IMG/VR virus record: IMGVR_UViG_3300028364_000014
Coordinates: 1-64,000 of that record
DNA length: 64,000 nucleotides
Reading direction: 5' to 3' (one strand)
Made by a program: the position numbers and the translations under genes. Under the pieces are notes generated by a model. That model saw only the letters and a program-made list of their open reading frames with translations, searched no databases and was not told the origin of the DNA. Numbering within the stretch: the stretch's first letter is position 1; every line of letters begins with the position of its first letter. This document shows positions 25,956 through 64,000 of this stretch, piece after piece.

Positions 25956-27118
25956 TAGTTTTCCTCCTTATTTTTGTCAGTAAAAACTTTTTTGGCATTA
26001 ACCAATGCTTTTTCTAATCTTAACAAACATCTCGAACTTTCTTTACTATCGAGTTCAAATTGTTTACCAGCTAGAAGCTTCTTTGTATAAGATGACGCCG
26101 TAAATTCTGCAATAAACCTGAGACAGCGCGGGTCAAGCGCATCTCTTGTATCAGAAGTACACGGAGAATCAAACAAAGTACAGTAGTTTTCAGCCAAAAC
26201 AACATCGTGCTTATCAGTGAGACGTTTTTTGTAATTTATACAAATACCCACTGTATCATCATAATTTAAATTAGAGTTTTCTTTTTTATCTTCTATACTT
26301 TGGGAGGTTACATTAATACCCTCAACTTTTTTATCAATAACAGGTGTGACAACTTCTTCTTTTGTAGAACTATTTTCTACTAAATCAAGATCAAATATAA
26401 TCGGTTTAATATCATCATCAGACGCGGTTTCTAAAATAACACTCGGAGGATTAGCTGGATTTTTAACAATCCCGCACCCAGAGAAACATATCCCTCTAAG
26501 TACTCTAGCTACAGTGCCTTCGGCTACCTCTTTACCACCTTTCATTATCTTTGCTGATTTTCCAAAAATACTTTCATCAGATAACTCAATACCTAAAGAG
26601 TTTGCTACAGACTTTGGTATAATCATATCACCTACTTTAATATCAAAGTCTTTAAAATAACATTCCATAGATACCTTCCATTCATTATTAGCAATTTCTT
26701 TTGCTATGTCTGGAAATCTATTTTTATAAACAATAGAACCTATTTGTATATGCATATCCTTAGTATCTAAAGTTGCAGTCTCAGTAGAGGACAACTCAGT
26801 AAGGTCAAGTGCTTTATGCTGATCATCAGTAAAAGCATGAGAATATAAATGACCAATAATCTCAGTCTCTTCATGTTCCACATCTAGTGCTTTACTAACA
26901 ATAGTATTAGCAGCGGCTACTAGCTCTGACCCTAAGAAAAAAGCATGGTTAAGGTTTTCACCTGAGCTAACAAGAATGGCAGAAAAATAAGAAAGGTCGG
27001 GTTGTTTCTCACCAGGACCTGGTAAATTGATTACAGAAGCCACCTCCTTCTTTAATTCCTCTGTTTCCTCATCCATGTCAATACTAGCTGTTAAATAAAA
27101 TTTATACTTATCTTCCAT
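25955..27118 (-). CDS. Putative prohead maturation protease
   Basis: WKVSMEC (candidate catalytic Ser) and FSGCGIVKNPANPPSVI motifs; position between portal and scaffold. Confidence 0.65.
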   Translation of the reverse strand: MEDKYKFYLTASIDMDEETEELKKEVASVINLPGPGEKQPDLSYFSAILVSSGENLNHAFFLGSELVAAANTIVSKALDVEHEETEIIGHLYSHAFTDDQHKALDLTELSSTETATLDTKDMHIQIGSIVYKNRFPDIAKEIANNEWKVSMECYFKDFDIKVGDMIIPKSVANSLGIELSDESIFGKSAKIMKGGKEVAEGTVARVLRGICFSGCGIVKNPANPPSVILETASDDDIKPIIFDLDLVENSSTKEEVVTPVIDKKVEGINVTSQSIEDKKENSNLNYDDTVGICINYKKRLTDKHDVVLAENYCTLFDSPCTSDTRDALDPRCLRFIAEFTASSYTKKLLAGKQFELDSKESSRCLLRLEKALVNAKKVFTDKNKEEN

Positions 27119-30828: not shown

Positions 30829-33819
30829 TTATTTAATTCTTTTCTTTAATACCGCGTGGCCTAGTCCGTATTCCAATAGTGGGGGTGCTTGAAAACTTGA
30901 AGTGCCTTGAGATCCTAAATAATCAAAACTAGTCCCTACTCTACTACGCACTAAGCCACTTACACTATGAAGAATAGGACCATCTCCCTCTTCGAGTTCC
31001 CTCTCAACCTGTCTTGCTCCATGGGCTCCTAATATAAGTGCAGAATATAAATCCTTATTCATATGCTTAGTAGGAGTATCGAAATGCAATATACCAGTAG
31101 AAGTTTGAGTAACTACTATATTTAATAACTGTGATTTAAGCGTTATTATATTTATATAAGCCCTAGCTAATAAATCGTTAGTAGAATTAGATGGATTATC
31201 TGGAAATAAAAGACTCTTATCCTCAAACATAGCTTTTGTAGTAAAATTGGCATCAGCTATCCAAGTAGGATTAAAATTAACCATATCTAGTATATGTCTT
31301 CCTTCTAAATGTATATGATCTTGGTTTCCTCTATCAATAATAGGTTCGGTTTCTCCGTAACCCTCCTCTAATAAATCACATACTGCCTTTCCACCTCCGC
31401 CTTTATCCATGAATATTCTAATGATATTATATTGATTACAAAGTTGTTGTACTGATCTTGTAAGTCCTTGTGTGGTCTGCTTTTTAAGTTCTATTACATT
31501 AACTATTTTATTAGGTTTACCTATTTCAATAATAACCACACCACAACTGGCGCTTCCCCCCTGATTAGGGTCAATACCCATTATATACTGTTTATTAGGC
31601 GCTCCATTGAACTGTAAAGTAAAATCATTCCCTAAAGTACAATCATCTAATAGGGATGCCTTAAAAAATCCCTCTGAATCTGAAACCATGGCAGCTTCAT
31701 ATTCCATACTATACTCATGTCTAGACATAATACGTTTAGCTTCAGCAATATTATTATTATCCAAGAACCCCTCAGGTAAGTCCCAATAAGGTACTTGCCA
31801 CACTGCATAATCACAATCCTTACCTTGAGCTTCAGCTTCCGCCACCATCTTCCAATGGTCCCTCATACGTCGCCACATATGATTAAATTTATAATACCCT
31901 GAGGAAGTCATTACCATCTTGTTAACTTTTTCCTCAGCAAAATCATCAGCAGCAGCAAGACCAGCATTAATCAAACGAGTCTGTTCCTCTAGTCTACGAA
32001 CTCTTTCCATCGGTGCCAAAGAGGTTGCTCCCATTGGTCTTACTACCATATCCAAAGTTTGATCTGGAACTTGCGCTAACTCATCCACAAGAATTAGATA
32101 GAAACGTGATCCACGAATTTTACTACCATCTCCTAGTGGTAGTCCCTCAATATATGATGGAGTTTTACCAGCAACCGACTTAAATTTTAAATAAGCTGTG
32201 TCTGAACCACGAGTTGGTTTCTTTGCAGAAGCTTCTCTAAGAATTGAAGATTGATCATATAGTTTCTCTACTTCAGCAAATATCATTTTTGAATTGTGAT
32301 TAATAAACCCGTTAGCCCAATAACAGTGTTCATTTTTTACTTCTATATCTATTGTTTCTGAAAAGAAGTAATCAACCTCTTTAATTTTAACAAAGTATAA
32401 CCCTTGTTCATATAATTTTTTGGCTTTATTGTAATTATCCTTTATTAATTTATTTGTAAGACCAATAGCCCTAGCTAAACTTTCTTCTTGATTAAAATGG
32501 TTATCTATATAAGCATTAAGCTTTTCTTTCTTTCTTAAGCATCTAAATCCAACAGTATCATTGAATCTTTTGATAAAAGTTTGTCCTGTAATCCTAACTT
32601 TATAGGCTTCTGCACATTTAGACGGTTTATTTCCTTGCGATAATTGTCTTATACATGCCTTTTTACTTATACCAAAGTTAGACACTATACCTAAATTTAG
32701 TAGTATAGCCTGCACTTCTTTAGCTAGTTGTTTAGAAGAAGTACTAAAGGCAATTTCAGAACCTTTATTTTTTTGCACATAAAAACACCCATCTGTGTCA
32801 TATAAACCCTGTAAACAAGCTATTAAGTTATCTCGTGAAGCTTTTTTTAAAATACTAGGAATCTTTTTATCCAGAGCTGTTGTTTTAGTAAAACCACACT
32901 CTAATAAATACTGGGCTAGTTGCTTACAAAAGTATTGAATTTCCCAAGTATCATTCCTTCTATTCCTTCTATCTATCTTTTCTTCTTTATCTACACAAAA
33001 ATATCTTCTTAGATTATTCTCAAAAGAGTCTAATAAATCCTGGTCTTCACTTACAAAGTCTACACGCTGTTTTCTTTTATTTTTACTAACAGAAACACAG
33101 CCATCACCTAGTAAAAGACCCATCCAATAAGATAAAGAAGGTGTTAATTCTTTAGGTATTAAACAATTTTTAGTTCTCCAATCATGTTCAAATTCAAATT
33201 CAGGCATCGAGTTATCATTACCAAAATAATTAAATCCTGTTTTTATTGCTATATATTCATCTTTTATATCCTGTAAGTCTTTAAATTCAGTATCTAAATC
33301 ATCGTTTAAACACACAACGGCATGATCTATAGTACCAGACAATTCAAATCCTTTTGTAGTTTTTATATACTTACATGCTTTATCTTTATCTGTCCATTTA
33401 CTGACTACTGTATTATGATTAAAATTTGACTGTACTCTTGTTTTTCCTGGAATTACTTTATTATAAAAATCCTCTGTACCTGTATTTAATCCTTCATTTG
33501 TCCAAAACGTAGCAAGTGTGTCTGATTTTATTAACGATTGTCTAAATACTGGGCCAATTAGACCTACCCTATAACCTGGATACAACAAGCAACTTAATGC
33601 AGCTAAAGTACCGAGCATAAAAGTTTTTCCCACGCCACGTCCACAAATAGCTATGACGTAGTTCTTAAACCACATGTCTCTAAAAACCAATCGCTGAATA
33701 GGTGCTAAATCTACCCCTAGGAGCTCATAAGCGGCTGTACAAGGGTGAGCTCTATAAAACTCTATAAGTTCCTTACCTTGTACCAGCAACGCTTCCATGT
33801 TTTGTCTTTTTTTAGCCAT
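30829..33819 (-). CDS. terL: Terminase large subunit with intein
   Basis: Walker A CGRGVGKT, Walker B LILVDE, nuclease GIDP and IFMDKGGG, KDLYSAL; intein insert after GPVFRQ. Confidence 0.92.
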   Translation of the reverse strand: MAKKRQNMEALLVQGKELIEFYRAHPCTAAYELLGVDLAPIQRLVFRDMWFKNYVIAICGRGVGKTFMLGTLAALSCLLYPGYRVGLIGPVFRQSLIKSDTLATFWTNEGLNTGTEDFYNKVIPGKTRVQSNFNHNTVVSKWTDKDKACKYIKTTKGFELSGTIDHAVVCLNDDLDTEFKDLQDIKDEYIAIKTGFNYFGNDNSMPEFEFEHDWRTKNCLIPKELTPSLSYWMGLLLGDGCVSVSKNKRKQRVDFVSEDQDLLDSFENNLRRYFCVDKEEKIDRRNRRNDTWEIQYFCKQLAQYLLECGFTKTTALDKKIPSILKKASRDNLIACLQGLYDTDGCFYVQKNKGSEIAFSTSSKQLAKEVQAILLNLGIVSNFGISKKACIRQLSQGNKPSKCAEAYKVRITGQTFIKRFNDTVGFRCLRKKEKLNAYIDNHFNQEESLARAIGLTNKLIKDNYNKAKKLYEQGLYFVKIKEVDYFFSETIDIEVKNEHCYWANGFINHNSKMIFAEVEKLYDQSSILREASAKKPTRGSDTAYLKFKSVAGKTPSYIEGLPLGDGSKIRGSRFYLILVDELAQVPDQTLDMVVRPMGATSLAPMERVRRLEEQTRLINAGLAAADDFAEEKVNKMVMTSSGYYKFNHMWRRMRDHWKMVAEAEAQGKDCDYAVWQVPYWDLPEGFLDNNNIAEAKRIMSRHEYSMEYEAAMVSDSEGFFKASLLDDCTLGNDFTLQFNGAPNKQYIMGIDPNQGGSASCGVVIIEIGKPNKIVNVIELKKQTTQGLTRSVQQLCNQYNIIRIFMDKGGGGKAVCDLLEEGYGETEPIIDRGNQDHIHLEGRHILDMVNFNPTWIADANFTTKAMFEDKSLLFPDNPSNSTNDLLARAYINIITLKSQLLNIVVTQTSTGILHFDTPTKHMNKDLYSALILGAHGARQVERELEEGDGPILHSVSGLVRSRVGTSFDYLGSQGTSSFQAPPLLEYGLGHAVLKKRIK
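32293..33537 (-). mobile_element. Intein (415 aa) with LAGLIDADG endonuclease in TerL
   Basis: Starts SLIKSDT, ends YWANGFINHN followed by Ser+1; LLLGDGC and LQGLYDTDG motifs; removal gives GPVFRQ-SKMIF. Confidence 0.9.
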
Positions 33820-49925: not shown

Positions 49926-51413
49926 TTAGTAAGTCACCAAGCCGCAATTGTTTGTCAATTTACGACAACGTTTAATGCCAAAAGTATCTAATTTTTTTGG
50001 ATTAAGAATGTTCTCAAAAGTAATAACCTCACCTTTGTTTTGCACGCCTTTACAAACTTGTATCATTGATTCTACGTTGACAACATCACCTTTTCGGATC
50101 TTGTAGTCAGTGATTAAACTTCTCATTACTTTTTTTCCTGGGATTGCAACTATAACTGTTGAGTTAAGCTTCCCCTCAACCATGAGAGATTGTTTTAATT
50201 CGGTAAGACTCTTTTTCTTAGGGTCTTGTCCTGCCCGTCGTTTACGATTCCAGGCTACTATCTTTTTCTTTTTTTCCGGTATTGAGTCAAAAATCATATA
50301 TCTACGATCCGTAGATCTTAACGTAAATGACCGGGTGTGCCTAGGAAATTGTCTCATATTCAACTCAGAATTATAATCTTTCCAAGAGTAATCTTGTAAA
50401 TCCTGATTTCCTAAACTGTCGTTGAATGCAATGAGGCTTGCATCACTGGCATGAGATTTAATAATATTGTCTCGATTCCTAACGCCACTCGTAATATATC
50501 CGTAAGTGTCTTGAATTGGACATTTGTCTTCAAATTCATTCCAGATCGTTTTCATGACTGAATTTAAAACTCCAGCATCACGGTATCCGTTTACAGAAGT
50601 AGATTCCTTTGGACATTTTAATCCATTTTTGTGAACTTTGTTATGACAATTTTCACACAGCAATATTAAATTTTCAGGTCGATCTGAACCACCATTACTC
50701 TTCCAAGTGATATGATGAACTTCGTTTCTAATTTTACCAACATCTTTTTTACAGATTTGACATTGGTAATTGTCTCTATTCCTTACATAACTTTTTACGT
50801 TTTCAAAACCAAATTGTAATCCTTTTTGATACCAAAAAGATTGGACCTTTGGAGTAATCATCTTGTGGATATCAAATTTATTATACTCTAAATGAATTTT
50901 AACTTGTTCAATTGGAACCAACTTTAATAACTTTGCCAATACATTTCTATGCGATTGGATCAAATGAAGATGAGTAACTTGAAACTTATGTTTACTTCGA
51001 TTTTTCCAAATAGGGTGCTTGAACTTAGCATTTCCAGCCCCATACTTTTTTTTGATACCTTTTCGAGCCAGATATCTTCGACTGCGGCGATACATTCTTT
51101 TGGCATCAAGCCCTTCTTTGATCTTTGCTGTGCGTAGGTATACCTCTCCGTTAATAAGTTTAGTAATAACATCCCTTTGGATTTTAAATACTGCAAACCC
51201 AATGTTCGCATATCCAGGATCAATACCTATTCTAAACTCACAATTAATTGTTTCACTTTTATAAAATACTTTTGTTAATAATTGAACAATAATTACGTCT
51301 TTGTTTAATCGTTTTATAACTTTAGCTTTCTTGTTTCGAATCAACCTTCCCACCATATCGTGTTTTTTGGTAGGGTGGCCGATATTGTTTCTTGCGTCTA
51401 CAATGTAAATCAT
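49926..51413 (-). CDS. iscB: IscB RNA-guided endonuclease
   Basis: PLMP-like N-terminus (GHPT), RuvC-I GIDPG, Arg-rich RRSRR bridge helix, RuvC-II HLEYNKFD, HNH EVHH...PENLILLCENCH, RuvC-III SHASDA. Confidence 0.92.
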   Translation of the reverse strand: MIYIVDARNNIGHPTKKHDMVGRLIRNKKAKVIKRLNKDVIIVQLLTKVFYKSETINCEFRIGIDPGYANIGFAVFKIQRDVITKLINGEVYLRTAKIKEGLDAKRMYRRSRRYLARKGIKKKYGAGNAKFKHPIWKNRSKHKFQVTHLHLIQSHRNVLAKLLKLVPIEQVKIHLEYNKFDIHKMITPKVQSFWYQKGLQFGFENVKSYVRNRDNYQCQICKKDVGKIRNEVHHITWKSNGGSDRPENLILLCENCHNKVHKNGLKCPKESTSVNGYRDAGVLNSVMKTIWNEFEDKCPIQDTYGYITSGVRNRDNIIKSHASDASLIAFNDSLGNQDLQDYSWKDYNSELNMRQFPRHTRSFTLRSTDRRYMIFDSIPEKKKKIVAWNRKRRAGQDPKKKSLTELKQSLMVEGKLNSTVIVAIPGKKVMRSLITDYKIRKGDVVNVESMIQVCKGVQNKGEVITFENILNPKKLDTFGIKRCRKLTNNCGLVTY

Positions 51414-51419
51414 CTTTTC

Positions 51420-51675
51420 CCCTCTTAATAAATACCCATTGATCGGGCAAACTAAGAATAGTTCGGTTCGTCTCCCCCGACTTAATCAAAAGTAATACTG
51501 ATCTTCGTTACCTACTAATCAGCAATGAGGACTTGTAATGCTCCGCTTACCTCCATTGCTACGGACTGGGAGTGGCATCCGTAGGTGAACTCTCGATTAA
51601 ACGTCTGTTCAATCCTGAATTAAATCAGCTTGCTGTTGATTGCAAGCCCAAGTCCTTTAGGCTTGGGTAATTGAC
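51420..51675 (-). ncRNA. omegaRNA/HEARO-type scaffold of IscB
   Basis: About 255-nt structured noncoding region between the left end and iscB, with CACCTACGGATGCCACTCCCAGTCCGTAGC and GTCGGGGGAGAC elements typical of HEARO/omegaRNA. Confidence 0.8.
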
Positions 51676-58117: not shown

Positions 58118-58472
58118 ACTTCTTCACAAATGCAGCAGCCCAATAGGCAAACACTTCCTCAGGAAACTCACATTTGGCCGTATTATACATATGACAAACC
58201 ATTTGGCAGTTATTTTCTGTATATCCTTTGTTTGAATCTACTCTATCAATACTTGGGTAGTAGGGATTTACATACGGATCTCTGTGAGTCTTAAAAGGCA
58301 AGCCAGTGACCTCACAACGACCAGCATCCAATTTATCACGTATCCAGTTAGGTGTTAAACTAAACGGGATATTTTTTCGGCGGGCGCGCTTTTCAAGTTT
58401 TTGTAGTTTGTTGTTTAAATTACTAAAATAATTATCCATGGTTGGTTCCTTTTTTTTATCTTTTTCCCCCAT
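58086..58472 (-). CDS. Short His-Me/HNH-like endonuclease, paralogue of the C-terminal domain of 56990..58117
   Basis: CEVTGLPF...PSIDRVDSNKGYTENNCQMVC. Confidence 0.7.
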   Translation of the reverse strand: MGEKDKKKEPTMDNYFSNLNNKLQKLEKRARRKNIPFSLTPNWIRDKLDAGRCEVTGLPFKTHRDPYVNPYYPSIDRVDSNKGYTENNCQMVCHMYNTAKCEFPEEVFAYWAAAFVKKYEEDNNEIVL

Positions 58473-58548
58473 CTCTTCTTCGGAGGTAAGTCCTAATCGT
58501 GGTTGTTTGTAAGCAGTGCTTCAAAAATAAATAATCAATAGAAAGGTG

Positions 58549-58702
58549 TTCTGACGAGTTAGATACTAAAGGTCTTCAGTACTAAAGGTCTTCAGTACTA
58601 ATAGTTTAAGTACTAATAGTTTAAGTACTAATAGTTTAAGTACTAAAGGTCTTCAGTATTGATAGTTTAAGTACTAAAGGTCTTCAGTACTGATGAGTTA
58701 GA
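58549..58702. repeat. Mixed 15/16-bp tandem repeat array at the strand switch
   Basis: A=TACTAAAGGTCTTCAG, B=TACTAATAGTTTAAG, C=T(A/T)CTGA(T/C)GAGTTAGA in the order C A A B B B A B' A C. Confidence 0.9.
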
Positions 58703-58997
58703 TACTATGTAGTTACTGCCTATATAGTAGTTAGTTTAATATAGCCTAAAGGTACTACTATCGTGGTCTAATACAATTTTAGAACCCCCAAAATAAGTGG
58801 GACAGGGACACTGTAGTATGATAGAGTATTATTGCATACATACAATACATTATAGGCCCCTTACTTCTTATTTAGTAGAGTGCCTTTATGCGATGACAGC
58901 TCTATGATAAACATACCAGCCGGGTGAGTCGGTTTGATATGAGATCAAGTTTGATCCCCCCCCCTCCCCCTGGGAGGCAACTACAAAGGAGATTATT

Positions 58998-59231
58998 ATG
59001 ACTACCACACAAAAGACTTATGAGCAAGTAATCGAGACTAAGGAATCTTATATTGATGTATATCAGCCAGTTGCAGGTTGGAAACCTCAACTAATGGTTT
59101 GGATGGAAGAGGATGGCATGACTGGATTTGTATGTCTCAACACAAGCTACTTCGCATATGAAACAAGGGAGAAGGCTGTTGTTGAGGCTAAGCAGTGGGC
59201 TGAGGATGAGGATATAGCCTATGTAGAATAA
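58998..59231 (+). CDS. Early-region hypothetical protein (77 aa, acidic)
   Basis: AAGGAG RBS. Confidence 0.7.
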   Translation: MTTTQKTYEQVIETKESYIDVYQPVAGWKPQLMVWMEEDGMTGFVCLNTSYFAYETREKAVVEAKQWAEDEDIAYVE

Positions 59232-59234
59232 ACA

Positions 59235-59300
59235 ATCCGAAACGGGACTATACATCCCGTCTACAGCCTTAAGCAAGCTGTACTGATGAAGGTAGCTTAA
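59235..59300 (+). ncRNA. Hammerhead ribozyme (type II-like, open stem II)
   Basis: GAAAC-GGGA/UCCC-GUC stem III, UACAGC/GCUGUA stem I, CUGAUGA core; 2-bp stem II after an extra A; loop I UUAAGC can pair with the 3' GCUUAA. Confidence 0.75.
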
Positions 59301-59327
59301 TTAATATATAACTTAAGGAGACTTATC

Positions 59328-59516
59328 ATGACTAATTCAATCAACATTACTGACGCACCAAAATGTAAAACATTTGAAATGAATGGTAATACTTGTGAAG
59401 GTTGTTTGGTTGACCCTTGTCCTTGTGGAACCGATGACGCTAATTCACTTGAATACATCGATCATGTTGGATATTGTATAATTAACAAAAATAACGAAAT
59501 TGTGGAGGTGATGTAA
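59328..59516 (+). CDS. Cys-rich small protein (62 aa)
   Basis: AAGGAG RBS. Confidence 0.65.
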   Translation: MTNSINITDAPKCKTFEMNGNTCEGCLVDPCPCGTDDANSLEYIDHVGYCIINKNNEIVEVM

Positions 59517-59662
59517 TGATAAAGTTTATTAAACCTTTAGTAATGTTTACCACATCATTCAGCGCAGTATGGTACGCAGCATTCATTCTTGACCCAGACT
59601 TTGTTAAGTTTGTCTGGGAAGCAGTCAAATACACTACCCAGCATTGGCTGTGGATAGTGTAG
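59516..59662 (+). CDS. Small hydrophobic protein (48 aa), not in the ORF track
   Basis: GGAGG RBS; MIKFIKPLVMFTTSFSAVWYAAFILDPDFVKFVWEAVKYTTQHWLWIV. Confidence 0.55.
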   Translation: MIKFIKPLVMFTTSFSAVWYAAFILDPDFVKFVWEAVKYTTQHWLWIV

Positions 59663-59705
59663 ATTTTAACTCTTTCGTCTTGGGCAGGACGTTAACTTAC
59701 CCATC

Positions 59706-59773
59706 ACTCGTCTGAGCGAGTATAAACAGTCCTTAGGCTCAGAGCGTCGTCCCACTTCGGTGGGGCGGGTGGC
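59706..59773 (+). ncRNA. Pistol ribozyme, copy 1
   Basis: P1 ACUCG/CGAGU, loop UCUGAG pairing with CUCAGA (pseudoknot), UAAA linker, GCGU junction, P3 with UUCG loop, G-GU-GGC cleavage context. Confidence 0.85.
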
Positions 59774-59807
59774 AATAACGCCTTAATTAGTTAAATAGGA
59801 GTTTATT

Positions 59808-60095
59808 ATGAAAGTAAGAACAACTGCACTTATTATGTCGTCTATCCTCGATTCAGGACGCACCATTGATATGAGTGGGGCAAGTAACCTTCTTCAGTTT
59901 GGTAATAAAGCCAGTTACCTTGGTGGTGGGTGGTGGTACATCAGTGATAGTGGAGGAACATCATTGAAGAAAACCATTATGGCTATTAGGTCACTTACCA
60001 GGTCTGGTAAGGTGTGTGTGGAATGTGGAAAACTTCACATCTGTAATGACAAGTGTGTAAAATGCGCCAGTGCATCATCGCCTGAATACTGGTAA
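59808..60095 (+). CDS. Hypothetical protein with C-terminal zinc ribbon
   Basis: AGGAG RBS; CVECG...CVKC. Confidence 0.65.
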   Translation: MKVRTTALIMSSILDSGRTIDMSGASNLLQFGNKASYLGGGWWYISDSGGTSLKKTIMAIRSLTRSGKVCVECGKLHICNDKCVKCASASSPEYW

Positions 60096-60146
60096 TCAAC
60101 AGTCCTTTCGAATATTAAATATATAGATATTAAAAGGAGTATTACT

Positions 60147-60347
60147 ATGGAATTAAAGGAAGTGGGAAAAAGAGAACTAGCGGAACAGTACAATATTCCT
60201 GAAGAGTATTTAAGGTATATAGGACCCACTGATTGCTCAATGCTAGCTGGAGGAGGTAAACTTCATCAGTATAATATCCACCTCAAAGGACACCCGAACG
60301 ACAAATCGACGGTTGCATACAGACAAAAGGAGGTACAAAATGGTTAA
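60147..60347 (+). CDS. Hypothetical protein (66 aa)
   Basis: AAGGAG RBS. Confidence 0.65.
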   Translation: MELKEVGKRELAEQYNIPEEYLRYIGPTDCSMLAGGGKLHQYNIHLKGHPNDKSTVAYRQKEVQNG

Positions 60348-60744
60348 TGTATACGTAGACCTTGACGGCACCCTACTAGATAGCCGGCTTGATGATAAGT
60401 ACAAAGCCATCAGCACTCAGTATGGTAAGGGTTTTGCTGATGACTGGTATGAATCCACCTATTACGATACCCTTGAGCTCAATTTGGCTCTGTGGTGTCG
60501 TCTATTGGTATTAAAGGAAGAGGGTGCTTCTATTGTAGCCTGGACTAATAGACGAGAATCTAAGGCTGACATGACATTCAGTAATTTGGCTAAGCTTGGT
60601 ATTATGGATTTGTTTTCAGGATTTATGTTCTGTAACGGACAAAAACATACTATGCCACTCAGGGATGGAGTAGTATTTGAGAATGAGTTCGACAATGAGA
60701 TTGAATGTTCAGAATTTAATTTTATCCCAACATTTAAACTGTAA
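60340..60744 (+). CDS. HAD-superfamily hydrolase
   Basis: ATG at 60340 after AGGAGG; YVDLDGT motif I, AWTNR motif II. Confidence 0.75.
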   Translation: MVNVYVDLDGTLLDSRLDDKYKAISTQYGKGFADDWYESTYYDTLELNLALWCRLLVLKEEGASIVAWTNRRESKADMTFSNLAKLGIMDLFSGFMFCNGQKHTMPLRDGVVFENEFDNEIECSEFNFIPTFKL

Positions 60745-60755
60745 GGAGATTCAAG

Positions 60756-60848
60756 ATGGATAAATGGTTAGAAATTGTGTCTGGAATTGTGTGTGGGTTG
60801 CTGATTGTTGGTATGATATATATGGCAATGCTCGGAATGGCTAACTAA
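60756..60848 (+). CDS. 30-aa single-TM peptide, not in the ORF track
   Basis: AAGGAG RBS; MDKWLEIVSGIVCGLLIVGMIYMAMLGMAN. Confidence 0.55.
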   Translation: MDKWLEIVSGIVCGLLIVGMIYMAMLGMAN

Positions 60849-60860
60849 TAAGGAGGCATT

Positions 60861-61058
60861 ATGAAGGTAAGCAGATTTACTACAAAAAAGAATAACTATA
60901 GCAAGAGATACCTTGAGAAAGAGTATAGAGAGGAGTATTTGGTCGCTAAGTTATCAAAGAAATCCTCTACTCTTGCATACGATTTTAATTCTCCTACAGA
61001 AAATACAATAAACAACTGGGAAAGAACTTCAAATGGAGCAAAGATTTGGAGTTTTTAA
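60861..61058 (+). CDS. Hypothetical basic protein (65 aa)
   Basis: AAGGAGG RBS. Confidence 0.65.
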   Translation: MKVSRFTTKKNNYSKRYLEKEYREEYLVAKLSKKSSTLAYDFNSPTENTINNWERTSNGAKIWSF

Positions 61059-61094
61059 TATATTAACCTATAACTGCCCCTTACTTAGAGGGGC

Positions 61095-61156
61095 ACCACT
61101 AAAGCACCGTTGTCAGGGTTCCCAAGTCCTGGATGAGAAAACTGCTGAGGGGTGGT
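61095..61156 (+). ncRNA. Twister ribozyme candidate (P1 type)
   Basis: P1 ACCAC/GUGGU, L1 UAA opposite GAGGG, P2 AGCA/UGCU, P4 CAGG/CCUG with loop GUUCCCAAGU; T1 CCC/GGG; T2 pairing imperfect. Confidence 0.6.
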
Positions 61157-61383
61157 TACAATTATCACTATAAGGATAAATGCGTATGTTACTATTATGA
61201 TGTTCTTAATGGCCCTAAAGTGTTTTACCATCAACTACAGGTGTTGCTCCAAAATGTAGTGTAGTAGCTATCTAATACCTACGGGGCAAAATCACATCTT
61301 AGGATACCATAACTAAAAGATACGAGTGAACTTTTAAAAGCAATTCTATCTATATTTATAAATAACTAATAGGAGATTACACC

Positions 61384-62691
61384 ATGAAGACAATCACAGT
61401 TGAAAACAATCAGGTATTTATCACAAACACCATTACCAATGAGAAAGTAAAACATAACTATTCAATGAACAACCGACCACTCAGTGTTGTTGAACTGTAT
61501 ACGAGTATTGATCCTATAGATATTAGAAAATCTCGTGAAAAGAAAGAAATAACTGCATTGTGGCGAGCAGCTGGAGATGAGCTAGGGACTTCAGTAGCTA
61601 ACTTCTCCAGAATGTTAAATGGTGCGTGTTATAAAGCTTATATTAAAGACAATGAAGACCTACACAACAGGTTTGGGGTTGAGTACAAAAAAGTTGGAGG
61701 AAAAGTTAAAAGAGTCAGAACCCGTTTAGCTGTTGAAATGGTAAATACTTACTGTGAAGTAATACGACAATATATTGCTGACGGTAATACTCATTTAGCC
61801 GGATTTAGTATTCCGTTCGGTGAAGCTAGTGTAGCTAAAAAGAAATTAGGCAAAGGATTGTGGAAACAACTAAATAAGAATTCTAAAACTAAGAATGATT
61901 TAATATGTAAGATACTTAATGCGTACTCTGAACCTAAACTTGATACTACAGCTTATACAGCCATGTTGAATAATACACCATCTACAATACTCAGTATGGT
62001 AGACAGTGCCAATACATTGCTGGCTTTCTTTAATACGGAAAGTTCAACAGGGATGAAGGATACTGTTAAAAAGTCAATTCAGCACATAGGACTTCCTATG
62101 TACAAATTAGATTATGAAAGACTGCAACGTGTTATTGTATTGATTCGTGATACACACCGTATGCATCAAAACTTTAACCCTAATTGGTCTTTAACTAGAA
62201 TTAAAGAAGAACATCAAATAACAATAAACGAGCAGTTTGCCTTAAGACACTCTAAAGAGAGGTTTAGTTGGTTAAACCTCATTACTCAGTACTTTGAGGC
62301 TAATGGTAATAAAGCTGAACTCATGTGCTCAGCATATGATATAGCTATACTAGGTAAGGACCAAGGACATTACGTAGGTAATTATGCACGTTTCAGTAAA
62401 GATGCTAACTACGTTGTATATAGAATTACTGACTGTGAGGGAACGATCTCTACATTAGGGATTAGGCACCCAGATGAAACAAATCACTTATGTGATCAAC
62501 ACTACCTGAGATTTAATTATATAGTAGCTAATGAAGCTTGTTTATCCTTTGCAGCTAAAATTACCAGACAAGTAAAAAAGGAATTAGAGTTGATTGATAT
62601 ATCCAAAAAACAGGAACCTTTAAAACCTATCACACAAGCTATCGATTTTCCTCAAATTGAAGCTGATGATCCAGAAGACACCCCATTCTAG
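61384..62691 (+). CDS. PcfJ-like domain protein (435 aa)
   Basis: C-terminal WSLTRIKEEH...LGKDQGHYVGNYA...VVYRI..TLGI resembles the PcfJ HCVGxY region (Cys replaced by Tyr). Confidence 0.55.
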   Translation: MKTITVENNQVFITNTITNEKVKHNYSMNNRPLSVVELYTSIDPIDIRKSREKKEITALWRAAGDELGTSVANFSRMLNGACYKAYIKDNEDLHNRFGVEYKKVGGKVKRVRTRLAVEMVNTYCEVIRQYIADGNTHLAGFSIPFGEASVAKKKLGKGLWKQLNKNSKTKNDLICKILNAYSEPKLDTTAYTAMLNNTPSTILSMVDSANTLLAFFNTESSTGMKDTVKKSIQHIGLPMYKLDYERLQRVIVLIRDTHRMHQNFNPNWSLTRIKEEHQITINEQFALRHSKERFSWLNLITQYFEANGNKAELMCSAYDIAILGKDQGHYVGNYARFSKDANYVVYRITDCEGTISTLGIRHPDETNHLCDQHYLRFNYIVANEACLSFAAKITRQVKKELELIDISKKQEPLKPITQAIDFPQIEADDPEDTPF

Positions 62692-62697
62692 TCAATT

Positions 62698-62763
62698 ATC
62701 TGTTTGAGCAGGTACACAGGCCTTAAGCTCAAAGCGTCGCCTCACTTCGGTGGGGCGGGTGGC
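62698..62763 (+). ncRNA. Pistol ribozyme, copy 2
   Basis: P1 AUCUG/CAGGU, loop UUUGAG pairing with CUCAAA (compensatory change relative to copy 1), GCGU, P3 with UUCG, P2 GCC/GGC; linker UACAC instead of UAAAC. Confidence 0.8.
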
Positions 62764-62814
62764 AAAATGGACATTCCGTCCACAATTAAACCGTAATACA
62801 TAGGAGATTACACC

Positions 62815-63420
62815 ATGACTAACATTATCAAAAAGAATGCTAAAGTACTTAACAATCGTGAACTTATAACTGGAATGGGCGCTAATGGTATTGTGCCCTC
62901 TCTTAACAACAAAGGCACACTTATTTTTACTCATTGCCCTATGTGCGAAGCAGAGCTCCTTGCAGATAACCCTGGTTATACTAAAGCTATTCTTAGTAAT
63001 AAACCTTGGTATCAAGCTACGCCAGCTATTGTGTTCAAAATGCCTAATGGCTCTACTCTCAAGGCGTGCTGTTGTGGTTATAGAGAGCTAGTAATTATTA
63101 CACCTAAACCTAGGTGCTCTAACTGCGGTAGTGTTCTTAAGAACGAAGGGGACAGGTGCTATGGTCCTAACTGCCAGCCTCCTACACAACAGGAGCTGGA
63201 CTCCATTGCGACCGAGAAAAAGCAAGCTCAGGAGATAAAGGCTGCTGAATTGAAAGCCAAACAAGAGGCTAAGCAAAAAGCCACTAAACCTCCTGTCAAA
63301 CAGTGCGTAACTCCTGGATGTACAAACCCAGTGCCTGAGAGTCGTTTTGTTAGATGCGAGGCATGTCGTGCAACACGAAGAACCCCAAAGGAGGAGGCTT
63401 GTACTGAAGTTCAGATGTAA
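62815..63420 (+). CDS. Multi-zinc-finger protein (201 aa)
   Basis: AGGAG RBS; CPMC, CCC, CSNC..C...C, CVTPGC..CEAC. Confidence 0.65.
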   Translation: MTNIIKKNAKVLNNRELITGMGANGIVPSLNNKGTLIFTHCPMCEAELLADNPGYTKAILSNKPWYQATPAIVFKMPNGSTLKACCCGYRELVIITPKPRCSNCGSVLKNEGDRCYGPNCQPPTQQELDSIATEKKQAQEIKAAELKAKQEAKQKATKPPVKQCVTPGCTNPVPESRFVRCEACRATRRTPKEEACTEVQM

Positions 63421-63589
63421 TCTGCTGGCTACCGAAGATGAACTCATCTATCTCATGATAGATGGACTAACCTATATCTACTGCCTTGATAAAGCTAAGC
63501 ATCCATACTTCATTAAAACATTGAAGTATAAACCAGGCAAAGCTATTAACTATATCAAAGCAGAAGCCTATTGGACAGAGATGGGTTAA
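63347..63589 (+). CDS. Hypothetical small protein (start uncertain)
   Basis: Track ORF overlapping the previous gene; probable start downstream (ATG 63455). Confidence 0.4.
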   Translation: MLDARHVVQHEEPQRRRLVLKFRCNLLATEDELIYLMIDGLTYIYCLDKAKHPYFIKTLKYKPGKAINYIKAEAYWTEMG

Positions 63590-63641
63590 ATTAAACCTGG
63601 GCACCTGAGTAATTAAGGTGTCCAAATTAAGGAGAATTATC

Positions 63642-63980
63642 ATGCAAAAAGCACTAAAAACTGTTAAACGAGCTACCTATGCACAAAAACGACAAGAGGC
63701 TTTTGATATGTTGAACAACACATATGAGGAAGAAGGTGTTCTTCTGTGCAGTGGGGAATTTAAAATCAATTCTCTGATGGCTATGATGATGGCAAGATCT
63801 GCTTTTAAAGAGACTTATGGAGCACTCGCCCCAAGGTACTTCAACATACCGGCTGACGAGCTTCCAGGAACTGAAGTACACCCAGGTGTATATATTTCAC
63901 GAGATGAGAATTCTCATTATTCTTTGGAGTACGAAGACGGTTTCCAAATGGAGGAATTTATTCAACAATGGGTATGTTAA
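63642..63980 (+). CDS. Hypothetical protein (112 aa)
   Basis: AAGGAG RBS before ATG 63642. Confidence 0.65.
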   Translation: MQKALKTVKRATYAQKRQEAFDMLNNTYEEEGVLLCSGEFKINSLMAMMMARSAFKETYGALAPRYFNIPADELPGTEVHPGVYISRDENSHYSLEYEDGFQMEEFIQQWVC

Positions 63981-64000
63981 ATAAATAAACAAGGGGCTCT

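What the first reader, a model, noticed from the sequence alone, without database searches (positions are those of the whole stretch)
59235..62763. Early-like operon punctuated by four self-cleaving ribozymes of three different classes
Seen: hammerhead (59235), pistol (59706), twister (61095) and pistol (62698) candidates all lie on the coding strand, each in an intergenic gap between a stop codon and the next Shine-Dalgarno. Known: each class occurs in phage and bacterial genomes. Inference: the phage may cut one long early transcript, possibly made by the virion RNAP, into separately stabilised or translated mRNAs without host RNases. Three classes used as punctuation within 3.5 kb is unusual.
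Basis: partly seen in the sequence, partly recalled or inferred. Interest (0 to 1): 0.85.

Follow-up and report, generated by a model that had tools for sequence, protein, structure and literature searches.

The report
Phage operon cut by four ribozymes
A run of small genes in an uncultured jumbo phage is separated by four self-cutting RNA motifs of three classes, and relatives carry other ribozyme classes at the same slots, so this is a clear new example of a known but functionally unexplained phenomenon.

Summary
Two pistol ribozymes pass Rfam's gathering score (59706-59774, 71.3 bits; 62698-62764, 49 bits).

- **Hammerhead:** the type II hammerhead (59235-59301) misses the cut-off by 0.4 bits. 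It has the complete core and a 6-bp loop-I/3'-tail pseudoknot that covaries in four other phage loci.
- **Twister:** the twister (61096-61155) scores low because stem P3 is absent. A structure descriptor finds it uniquely (0 hits in 300 shuffles). A homolog in a related operon (L005) covaries in P1, P2, P4 and T1. Its 2-bp T2 pseudoknot is imperfect, so activity is likely but unproven.

All four lie on the coding strand, between a stop codon and the next Shine-Dalgarno. Each upstream cleavage product would end in a stable hairpin.

The same slots hold other classes in relatives. A ~98%-identical strain has an HDV-like element where the window has the hammerhead. A distant relative has a pistol and an HDV-like element where the window has the twister.

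Ribozyme clustering near phage genes, and transcript processing as its purpose, were proposed in 2011-2015. I found no support for a virion RNA polymerase. Verdict: a new member of a known kind, of moderate interest.

The parts
58473..58997 (.). Divergent intergenic region upstream of the operon. It holds a tandem-repeat array (58578-58699, 31-nt period x3.9) and sigma-70-like hexamers. The promoter presumably lies here.
   Evidence: ORF layout; tandem repeats; promoter-like sites are no more frequent than in shuffles. Promoter not identified.
58998..59231 (+). o1, a 77-aa orphan gene and first cistron.
   Evidence: no family match.
59235..59301 (+). Type II hammerhead. GAAA at 59239-59242, stem III hairpin 59242-59260, cleavage after C59261, stem I hairpin 59262-59282, CUGAUGA at 59283-59289, an extra A at 59290, a 2-bp stem II (59291-59292 with 59237-59238), and a pseudoknot (59269-59274 with 59295-59300).
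   Evidence: Rfam 36.6 bits against a gathering score of 37, E 7.9e-5; descriptor hit; the same extra-nucleotide architecture in L021, and a covarying pseudoknot in L021, L027, L070 and L084.
59328..59662 (+). o2 (62 aa) and o3 (48 aa), overlapping orphan genes. This is the second segment.
59706..59774 (+). Pistol ribozyme 1; cleavage between G59769 and U59770.
   Evidence: Rfam 71.3 bits. An independent pistol model, R1, gives 63.3 bits. The 123 nt around it are 100% identical in strain L097, where the flanks are about 91% identical.
59808..61058 (+). Third segment: o4 (95 aa), o5 (66 aa), o6 (134 aa, weak HAD-phosphatase-like), o7 (30 aa) and o8 (65 aa).
   Evidence: o4 and o8 have relatives in L012.
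61076..61094 (+). G+C-rich hairpin directly 5' of the twister, in the position of the optional twister stem P0. It would be the 3'-terminal hairpin of the upstream cleavage product.
   Evidence: Fold -13.8 kcal/mol, z -3.8. An equivalent hairpin precedes the ribozyme in L012, L005 and L009. P0 occurs in 21% of twisters (PMC6154101).
61096..61155 (+). Type P1 twister without P3; cleavage between U61100 and A61101. P1 is 61096-61099 with 61152-61155, P2 is 61103-61106 with 61143-61146, P4 is 61114-61117 with 61128-61131, and T1 is 61121-61123 with 61149-61151. T2 is imperfect.
   Evidence: Rfam 24.5 bits, E 0.066; unique descriptor hit with 0 in 300 shuffles; explicit pair checks and a covarying homolog at L005:3748-3803.
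61156..61383 (+). 228-nt spacer between the twister and the next start codon. No ORF with a ribosome-binding site and no excess structure.
   Evidence: Fold z -0.05; no Rfam match.
61384..62691 (+). 435-aa PcfJ-like protein (PF14284 in its relatives). This is the fourth segment, bounded by ribozymes on both sides.
   Evidence: Homologs. In L012 the homolog is also flanked by ribozymes on both sides.
62698..62764 (+). Pistol ribozyme 2; cleavage between G62759 and U62760.
   Evidence: Rfam 49.0 bits; R1 38.2 bits. Its pseudoknot differs from that of pistol 1 by a compensatory C-G to U-A change.
62815..63420 (+). o10, a 201-aa Cys-rich orphan, start of the fifth segment. The segment continues past the window end.
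   Evidence: a relative in L005.

Best explanation
The plus-strand gene string starting at 58998 is transcribed as one long RNA. Four cis-acting ribozymes cut it as it is made: a type II hammerhead, a pistol, a type P1 twister and a second pistol. The cuts yield five pieces: o1; o2-o3; o4-o8; the PcfJ-like gene; and o10 onward.

By the established chemistry of these ribozyme classes, each upstream piece ends in a 2',3'-cyclic phosphate and each downstream piece starts with a 5'-hydroxyl.

Shown here:
- Each upstream piece would end in, or within 6 nt of, a stable stem-loop. These are hammerhead stem III, pistol P3, or the hairpin before the twister.
- Each downstream piece starts 38-283 nt before a strong ribosome-binding site.

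Inferred: the modules act as class-independent 'hairpin plus cutter' insulators. They would give each gene cassette its own ends, and so its own stability and translation, independent of its neighbours and of host endonucleases.

Shown by comparison: the modules are interchangeable and mobile. Closely and distantly related phages carry a different ribozyme class, or none, at the same slot.
For: Ribozyme identity:
- Covariance-model matches.
- An independent pistol model.
- Descriptors with shuffle controls.
- Pseudoknot covariation for the hammerhead.
- Helix covariation for the twister against L005.

One transcript: all genes are co-oriented and no + strand terminator is predicted.

Protective 3' ends: terminal hairpins of -7.9 to about -27 kcal/mol at the ends of the 5' products.

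Cleavage, not class, is what is kept:
- Strain L098 (~98% identical) has an HDV-like element exactly where the window has the hammerhead.
- L012 has a pistol upstream and a pistol downstream of its PcfJ-like gene, where the window has twister and pistol.
- L012 also has an HDV-like element after the conserved o8 3' end and hairpin, where the window has the twister.
- L009, L010 and L011 have an HDV-like element right after the PcfJ-like stop.

Constraint: pistol 1 is identical in a strain whose flanks are 91% identical.

Precedent: the processing hypothesis for phage ribozymes (PMC3088659; PMC6765202).
Against: - No cleavage or transcript data exist for this uncultured phage.
- The hammerhead is 0.4 bits under Rfam's threshold. 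It needs an extra A between A9 and G10.1 to form its 2-bp stem II.
- The twister's 2-bp T2 pseudoknot has a C.U mismatch in register. In the high-throughput study PMC11662667, one imperfection there lowered the mean cleaved fraction from 0.76 to 0.53.
- Many of the roughly 19 loci with PcfJ-like homologs showed no ribozyme with the tools I could apply to them. The exceptions are L005, L009-L011, L012, L100 and L103. So the modules are dispensable for these genes.
- The promoter, and hence the single-transcript assumption, is unverified.
- The stabilising effect of 5'-OH ends and 3' hairpins is inferred from general knowledge of bacterial RNA decay, not shown here.
Confidence: 0.6

Rival explanations
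1. The ribozymes are mainly passengers or landmarks of mobile gene cassettes. They spread between phage genomes with, or at the edges of, inserted genes, and they persist because they are harmless. They would mark recombination joints rather than provide a regulatory benefit.
For: - Strain L096 has a ~1.4-kb insertion in the o4-o5 gap. It begins with an HDV-like element at 147-201, followed by a ~300-aa ORF.
- In L098 the swapped segment is the ribozyme plus the start of o2.
- The HDV-like elements of L012 and L096 differ at 2 of 55 positions, although the phages share only ~35% protein identity.
- The order of o4, o8 and the PcfJ-like gene differs between the window and L012, with ribozymes at the boundaries.
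- The two window pistols share almost identical 3' halves.
- Most PcfJ-like loci have no ribozyme.
Against: - Replacing one class by another at exactly the same slot is hard to explain without selection for cleavage there.
- The motifs keep intact catalytic cores and covarying helices.
- Pistol 1 is more conserved than its coding flanks.

This rival concerns origin and is compatible with the processing function.
Confidence: 0.2
2. Only the two pistols are active. The hammerhead and/or the twister are decaying relics that no longer cleave, so the operon is cut at two or three sites, not four.
For: - Both are below Rfam's gathering score.
- The hammerhead has an inserted A next to the core and only a 2-bp stem II.
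- The twister's T2 pair is changed on both sides to a non-pair (CC against GU), whereas its homolog in L005 keeps GC:GC.
- Pseudoknot imperfections are the ones twisters tolerate least (PMC11662667).
Against: - Stem II of 1-2 bp combined with a 4-6-bp pseudoknot is the normal, fast-cleaving type II design (PMC3088659).
- L021 has the same extra nucleotide with different stems and a different pseudoknot, so it is a recurrent variant.
- A natural viroid hammerhead with an extra nucleotide in the core is on record (De la Pena and Flores 2001, listed). That it sits at this same position and retains activity is from my own knowledge.
- A one-base shift gives the twister a fully paired AC:GU T2.
- All other conserved twister nucleotides are present.
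- Both elements are unchanged in strain L098, apart from the wholesale hammerhead swap.
Confidence: 0.25
3. The motifs are chance look-alikes in A+T-rich intergenic DNA.
For: Two of the four are below Rfam's thresholds.
Against: - E-values of 5e-11 and 7e-6 for the pistols over the whole window.
- 0 twister-descriptor hits in 300 shuffles.
- The hammerhead descriptor gives 15 sites in 78 pistol-bearing loci against 1.3 in shuffles, all on the pistol strand.
- Helices covary in homologs.
Confidence: 0.01

Closest known systems
Multiple hammerhead ribozymes flanking genes in prophages and phages (Perreault et al. 2011, PMC3088659)
   Same: Several self-cleaving ribozymes sit on the coding strand between small phage genes. 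The type II architecture has a very short stem II and a pseudoknot between loop I and the 3' tail. The authors proposed processing of long phage transcripts into gene-length mRNAs. They also describe a halovirus hammerhead 13 nt before the first gene of an early polycistronic transcript, with a mapped 5' end.
   Different: The window mixes three classes (hammerhead, pistol, twister), and its relatives add HDV-like elements. The hammerhead carries an extra nucleotide after A9.
Ribozyme-rich neighbourhoods that led to the discovery of pistol, hatchet and twister-sister (Weinberg et al. 2015, as summarised in PMC6765202 and PMC4604425)
   Same: Different classes of self-cleaving ribozyme lie close to each other and to phage-type genes. 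Pistols are frequent near phage genes. The function is unknown.
   Different: I could not read the 2015 paper itself. So I cannot say whether three classes within 3.5 kb, or class replacement between near-identical strains, was reported there. The host here is a ~238-kb uncultured phage.
Dense pistol and pistol-plus-hammerhead arrays in other IMG/VR viral contigs
   Same: L054 has 6 pistols in about 4 kb. L027 has 4 pistols plus a Hammerhead_II at 48.7 bits within 2.3 kb. L050 has 4 pistols plus hammerheads. L070 has 3 pistols plus about 5 hammerhead sites. In every case all are on one strand.
   Different: These have one or two classes each. No twister was found in those 78 loci with the strict descriptor; the looser descriptor gives one opposite-strand site in L042.
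Minimal HDV-like 'theta' ribozymes of gut phages (Kienbeck et al. 2024, PMC10879173)
   Same: The HDV-like elements in the window's relatives (L012, L096, L098, L005, L009, L100, L103) have the nested double-pseudoknot layout. P4 is tiny or absent, and a C opens J4/2. They occur in tailed-phage genomes.
   Different: Theta ribozymes abut tRNA genes and process tRNAs. These lie between protein-coding genes. None is present in the window itself. Rfam did not detect the L005 copy. Membership was tested only with my own descriptor and model.
Synthetic ribozyme insulators such as RiboJ
   Same: A self-cleaving ribozyme placed between a promoter or upstream sequence and the ribosome-binding site removes upstream RNA context from the downstream cistron.
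   Different: Those are engineered parts. Here the arrangement is natural, repeated four times, and paired with 3'-terminal hairpins for the upstream product.

Membership tests
Pistol ribozyme (RF02679) | Covariance-model score at or above Rfam's gathering score (34.5 bits) | tested here: met
   71.3 bits (59706-59774) and 49.0 bits (62698-62764), full-length matches to model positions 1-68. An independent model built from 20 other phage pistols gives 63.3 and 38.2 bits.
Pistol ribozyme (RF02679) | Stems P1, P2 and P3, plus a pseudoknot between the P1 loop and the P2-P3 junction | tested here: met
   P1 and P3 pair in both copies. The 7-bp pseudoknot is present in both, with a compensatory C-G to U-A difference between them. 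P2 of copy 1 has only 2-3 standard pairs, with one U.C mismatch flagged.
Pistol ribozyme (RF02679) | Two-nucleotide G-U junction linking P3 and P2, which is the cleavage site | tested here: met
   G59769-U59770 and G62759-U62760 align to the GU of the consensus. The feature is described in PMC4604425 and PMC6154101.
Pistol ribozyme (RF02679) | Conserved AUAAA linker between P1 and P2 | tested here: inconclusive
   Copy 1 has it intact. Copy 2 lacks two of these nucleotides (a gap in the alignment), which explains its lower score.
Pistol ribozyme (RF02679) | Mg2+-dependent site-specific self-cleavage | not testable with these tools
   Needs an in vitro transcription and cleavage assay.
Hammerhead ribozyme, type II (RF02276) | Covariance-model score at or above the gathering score (37 bits) | tested here: not met
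   36.6 bits, E 7.9e-5 in a 5.6-kb scan against all families. It is 0.4 bits short, and the model cannot score the pseudoknot.
Hammerhead ribozyme, type II (RF02276) | Catalytic core CUGANGA, GAAA and the NUH cleavage triplet, in type II order (stems I and III closed, stem II open) | tested here: met
   GAAA at 59239-59242, GUC ending at 59261 and CUGAUGA at 59283-59289. Stem III is a 6-bp hairpin and stem I a 6-bp hairpin.
Hammerhead ribozyme, type II (RF02276) | Standard pair at 10.1-11.1 directly adjoining the core | tested here: inconclusive
   This is met only if A59290 is read as an inserted nucleotide, giving G-C, G-C. Without the insertion, 10.1-11.1 is an A.C mismatch. L021 has the same layout with U as the extra base.
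Hammerhead ribozyme, type II (RF02276) | Pseudoknot of 4 or more bp between loop I and the 3' tail after stem II (present in the majority of type II members) | tested here: met
   6 Watson-Crick pairs, 59269-59274 with 59295-59300. Different but complementary sequences occupy the same place in L021, L027, L070 and L084. The feature and its functional importance are described in PMC3088659.
Twister ribozyme, type P1 (RF03160) | Covariance-model score at or above the gathering score (67.2 bits) | tested here: not met
   24.5 bits, E 0.066. The whole of P3 (16 model positions) is deleted. P3 is absent in about 20% of twisters.
Twister ribozyme, type P1 (RF03160) | Stems P1, P2 and P4, with the N-A cleavage step after P1 | tested here: met
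   4-bp P1, P2 and P4 all pair, with U61100/A61101 at the cleavage step. The homolog L005:3748-3803 keeps all three stems with different sequences.
Twister ribozyme, type P1 (RF03160) | Highly conserved loop nucleotides (L1 UAA and GAGGG; the L4 heptamer UCCCAAG) | tested here: met
   All are present. L4 carries a 2-nt insertion on its 5' side.
Twister ribozyme, type P1 (RF03160) | Pseudoknot T1 (3 bp, L4 with L1) | tested here: met
   CCC with GGG in the window and CCA with UGG in L005, which is a compensatory change.
Twister ribozyme, type P1 (RF03160) | Pseudoknot T2 (2 bp, conserved GC in L2 with GC in L4) | tested here: inconclusive
   In register it is CC against GU, giving one C.U mismatch. 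Shifted by one base it is AC with GU, fully paired but at the cost of one P2 pair. L005 has the canonical GC:GC. Published data: one imperfection here lowers the mean cleaved fraction from 0.76 to 0.53.
HDV-like ribozymes (elements in relatives L012, L096, L098, L005, L009, L100 and L103; none in the window) | Nested double pseudoknot (P1, P2, P3, P1.1) with a catalytic C at the start of J4/2 | tested here: inconclusive
   My descriptor hits L012:312-366, against about 0.9 expected per 922 kb of shuffles. A relaxed form also hits L096, L098 and L009-L011. P1 and P3 are 100% paired with 3 compensatory pairs in 4 sequences. P2 differs but stays complementary. Model R2 finds 3 members it was not trained on. 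L098 and L009 have A-U instead of the usual G.U first pair.

The most novel reading that the evidence does not exclude
The ribozyme-bounded gene segments form a class-agnostic, mobile 'cassette' system. A hairpin plus any fast self-cleaver (hammerhead, pistol, twister or HDV-like) serves as a portable boundary that phages exchange. Segments cut on both sides (o2-o3, o4-o8, the PcfJ-like gene) carry a 5'-OH and a 2',3'-cyclic phosphate on the same molecule. They are therefore substrates for RtcB-type ligases, and could be circularised or re-joined as RNA.
Probability: 0.07. Interest if true: 0.85.

Novelty: new member of a known kind. Interest (0 to 1): 0.55.

Why it matters
What small self-cleaving ribozymes do in bacteria and phages is an open question more than a decade old (PMC6765202). 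This locus and its relatives offer a natural experiment. Near-identical phage strains carry a hammerhead or an HDV-like element at the same nucleotide position, and more distant relatives carry a pistol or an HDV-like element where the window has a twister.

That pattern argues that selection acts on cleavage at that spot and not on a particular RNA fold. It also gives matched sequences for direct tests: swap, kill or delete the ribozyme, then measure mRNA ends, half-lives and protein output.

The recurring pairing of a G+C-rich hairpin immediately 5' of the cut is a concrete, testable design rule. It says how the upstream mRNA might be protected.

Tried and rejected
1. **Virion or phage RNA polymerase.** PHROGs and Pfam scans of about 30 window ORFs found terminase, portal, major head protein, PhoH and many HNH/LAGLIDADG endonucleases. 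No RNA polymerase appeared. The idea is left unsupported.
2. **More ribozymes in the window or just beyond it.** None at E<=5 and none up to contig position 68688. My HDV-like descriptor also finds none in the window.
3. **GCCCCTTACTT as a phage promoter motif.** There are only two exact copies, and the second is simply the hairpin before the twister. Not significant.
4. **o6 as the 3'-phosphatase half of a polynucleotide kinase that might heal cyclic-phosphate ends.** The only matches are weak: PHROG E 1.5e-4, Pfam below its cut-off, and a PDB class B acid phosphatase at E 0.019. Not pursued.
5. **The 228-nt spacer after the twister as another structured RNA.** Fold z -0.05 and no Rfam hit.
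6. **Close relatives among cultured phages.** None. Only 44-nt pistol-core matches turned up, and Bacillus phage Troll and Gordonia phage GMA2 each have a single pistol within +/-12 kb.
7. **Homologs of o8.** Only the protein itself was found.
8. **Formal pair counting for the two twisters.** The MAFFT alignment was out of register, so I checked the pairs explicitly in a script instead.
9. **Rfam's alignment of the L005 twister.** It was mis-registered at P1 and T1 and was corrected by reading the sequence.
10. **Original papers.** Roth 2014 and Weinberg 2015 are not held in the library. I relied on reviews.
11. **'PcfJ' plus 'ribozyme' literature search.** It returned only C. elegans plasmid names.

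Full report
**What the window is.** A search with the 435-aa protein returned two IMG/VR contigs at 100% identity. One is 237,910 bp long, and its coordinates coincide with the window. So the window is the first 64 kb of an uncultured jumbo phage. Bases 9.4-58.5 kb carry minus-strand genes: a terminase with an endonuclease insert, portal, major head protein, PhoH and many HNH/LAGLIDADG endonucleases. From 58998 to the window end, and at least 4.7 kb beyond, a divergent plus-strand string of small genes follows. Ten of its products have no Pfam or PHROG match, apart from a weak HAD-phosphatase-like hit for o6. Relatives of the 435-aa protein carry the PcfJ domain PF14284. No cultured phage resembles the region, apart from 44-nt matches to the pistol core.

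**Checking the observation.**
- Rfam at gathering threshold reports two pistols: 59706-59774 (71.3 bits) and 62698-62764 (49.0 bits).
- A permissive scan of 58400-64000 adds Hammerhead_II at 59235-59301 (36.6 bits against a cut-off of 37, E 7.9e-5). It also adds twister-P1 at 61096-61155 (24.5 bits against 67.2, E 0.066).
- Nothing else appears in the whole window at E<=5, except a sub-threshold HEARO RNA elsewhere.
- All four are on the + strand. They begin 3, 43, 37 and 6 nt after the stop codons ending at 59231, 59662, 61058 and 62691. They lie upstream of AGGAG-type ribosome-binding sites for the AUGs at 59328, 59808, 61384 and 62815.

**The pistols.**
- Both align over the full model.
- The P1-loop/junction pseudoknot, which the model does not score, is present in both. 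It differs by one compensatory C-G to U-A change.
- Copy 2 lacks two nucleotides of the AUAAA linker. Copy 1 has a weak P2.
- A model I built from 20 other phage pistols, with the window excluded, scores them 63.3 and 38.2 bits.
- The predicted cuts are G59769/U59770 and G62759/U62760. This is the G-U junction described for the class.

**The hammerhead.**
- The sequence has GAAA, a 6-bp stem III hairpin, GUC, a 6-bp stem I hairpin and CUGAUGA in type II order.
- Stem II is two G-C pairs, provided A59290 is read as an extra nucleotide after A9.
- Six nucleotides of loop I (59269-59274) are exactly complementary to the 3' tail (59295-59300).
- Perreault et al. 2011 describe this design: stem II of as few as one or two pairs, plus a pseudoknot between loop I and the 3' tail that is required for fast cleavage.
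- My hammerhead descriptor recovers the site.
- In other viral loci, type II hammerheads show the same pseudoknot with different complementary sequences (L021, L027, L070, L084). L021 also has the same extra-nucleotide, GG:CC stem II layout.
- A natural viroid hammerhead with an extra core nucleotide is on record (De la Pena and Flores 2001, listed). That it sits at this same position and remains active is from my own knowledge.

I consider this a genuine type II hammerhead, with its activity untested.

**The twister.**
- The low Rfam score comes from deletion of the optional stem P3, which is absent in about 20% of twisters.
- A descriptor requiring P1, N-AA, P2, P4, the conserved L4 heptamer and GAGGG hits only 61096-61155 in the window, and nothing in 300 dinucleotide shuffles. 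The descriptor was written after I had seen the candidate, although from the published consensus.
- Explicit checks show P1, P2, P4 and the 3-bp pseudoknot T1 all pair. The 2-bp T2 has a C.U mismatch in register, or pairs fully (AC:GU) if shifted by one base.
- A 6-8-bp hairpin (61076-61094; -13.8 kcal/mol, z -3.8) sits where the optional stem P0 lies.
- The related locus L005 has a homolog (3748-3803). Rfam had mis-registered it.
- Read correctly, the L005 copy has a P0 hairpin, P1 CUAC/GUAG, UAA, a canonical GC:GC T2, and T1 as CCA:UGG. That T1 is compensatory relative to CCC:GGG.
- High-throughput data on natural twisters show broad tolerance of imperfections. One imperfection in the 2-bp pseudoknot lowers the mean cleaved fraction from 0.76 to 0.53.

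I put the chance that the window's twister cleaves at about 0.7.

**Anatomy of the products.** With cuts at 59261/59262, 59769/59770, 61100/61101 and 62759/62760, the RNA falls into five pieces: o1; o2-o3; o4-o8; the PcfJ-like gene; and o10 onward. Each 5' product ends in a stable stem-loop, or within 6 nt of one. These are hammerhead stem III, pistol P3 (9 bp, G+C-rich) or the hairpin before the twister. No plus-strand intrinsic terminator is predicted. [quoted passage not shown] That such ends and hairpins slow exonucleases and 5'-end-dependent RNases is inference from general knowledge.

**Relatives.** Three things stand out.

1. *Other pistol-bearing viral contigs.*
   - Dense same-strand arrays are common. 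L054 has 6 pistols in about 4 kb. L027 has 4 pistols plus a Hammerhead_II at 48.7 bits. L050 has 4 pistols plus hammerheads. L070 has 3 pistols plus about 5 hammerhead sites.
   - Across 78 such loci, my hammerhead descriptor finds 15 sites in 9 loci, against 1.3 in shuffles. All are on the pistol strand.
   - No twister was found there with the strict descriptor.
2. *Distant relatives sharing operon genes.*
   - L012 shares o4-, o8- and PcfJ-like genes with the window.
   - It has a pistol (58 bits) just upstream of its PcfJ-like gene, and a second pistol, cut off by the contig end, just downstream.
   - After the conserved o8 3' end and hairpin, it has an element that fits the HDV-like nested double pseudoknot.
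3. *Strain variants of the window phage itself.*
   - L098 is about 98% identical. It has an HDV-like element precisely where the window has the hammerhead. The flanks are conserved up to the stop codon of o1 and from the o2 ribosome-binding site.
   - L096 has a ~1.4-kb insertion in the o4-o5 gap. It begins with an HDV-like element almost identical to that of L012.
   - L097 keeps the 123 nt around pistol 1 (59690-59812) identical, while its flanks are about 91% identical.

The HDV-like family is supported by 100% pairing of P1 and P3 with three compensatory pairs, and by a complementary but different P2 in each lineage. A model built from four members also finds three further members, all intergenic and on the coding strand in PcfJ-type operons. 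From memory, its core resembles the HDV genomic ribozyme. Many other PcfJ-like loci show no ribozyme.

**Interpretation.**
- The ribozymes are real, and they sit where they would separate cistron blocks.
- Replacement of one class by another at the same slot argues that cleavage at that position is what is maintained. The replacement occurs even between strains about 98% identical.
- The gains, losses and near-identical copies in unrelated backgrounds show that the modules are mobile.
- The best-supported mechanism is co-transcriptional processing of a polycistronic RNA. It would produce segments with protected 3' ends and 5'-OH starts. This is a natural counterpart of engineered ribozyme insulators.
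- The idea was published in 2011 and remains untested in phages.
- I found nothing that bears on a virion RNA polymerase.

**Novelty and score.** Ribozyme clustering near phage genes is known, so this is a new member of a known kind. The three-class arrangement, the hairpin-plus-cutter pattern and the strain-level class swaps are good material for testing an old question. I score interest at 0.55.

Noticed in passing
window 49926-51675 (-): A sub-threshold HEARO RNA match (51492-51675, 46.5 bits against 83, E 2e-6) lies directly upstream of a 495-aa ORF (49926-51413). The ORF matches HNH-endonuclease PHROG 119 over residues 2-328. Together they look like an IscB/omega-RNA (IS200/IS605-type) element inside the phage.
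   Followed up: no
window 58578-58699: A tandem array lies in the divergent intergenic region upstream of the operon. It has a 31-nt period x3.9, made of two interleaved ~15-nt units. It could be operator or iteron sites.
   Followed up: no
window 61369-61387 and 62800-62818: An identical 19-nt ribosome-binding-site-plus-start segment precedes both the PcfJ-like gene and o10, that is, the genes downstream of the twister and of pistol 2. About 0.03 such matches are expected by chance. This suggests duplication or gene conversion of the translation-initiation region.
   Followed up: partly
window 30829-33819 (-) and many other minus-strand ORFs: The large terminase subunit is 996 aa and has an internal endonuclease/HNH-like insert, possibly an intein. 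At least eight free-standing HNH or LAGLIDADG homing-endonuclease genes are scattered through the structural region.
   Followed up: no
L012:312-366, L096:147-201, L098:1862-1932, L005:909-963, L009:2577-2637, L100:1358-1415, L103:1289-1346: A family of minimal HDV-like candidate ribozymes sits between protein-coding genes of related phage operons. Rfam did not detect the one copy it was shown. L098 and L009 have A-U instead of G.U as the first P1 pair.
   Followed up: partly
L014 (Gordonia phage GMA2) 11281-12058: In this cultured phage a pistol (56.8 bits) lies immediately after tRNA-Trp, inside a large tRNA array and next to a tmRNA gene. Here a pistol would be processing a tRNA cluster rather than an mRNA.
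   Followed up: no
L054:306-4313: Six pistols lie on one strand within about 4 kb of an IMG/VR contig. This is the densest single-class array seen here.
   Followed up: no
window 60340-60744 (+): o6 is a 134-aa HAD-superfamily-like protein with weak similarity to class B acid phosphatases and to a 'polynucleotide kinase' PHROG. A 3'-end-healing role on ribozyme products is conceivable but unsupported.
   Followed up: partly
window 26310-26425 (-); L042:2940-2995 (-): Single descriptor hits: a type I hammerhead inside a coding region of the window, and a twister on the strand opposite the pistol in L042. Both are within the false-positive rate of my descriptors and are probably chance.
   Followed up: no
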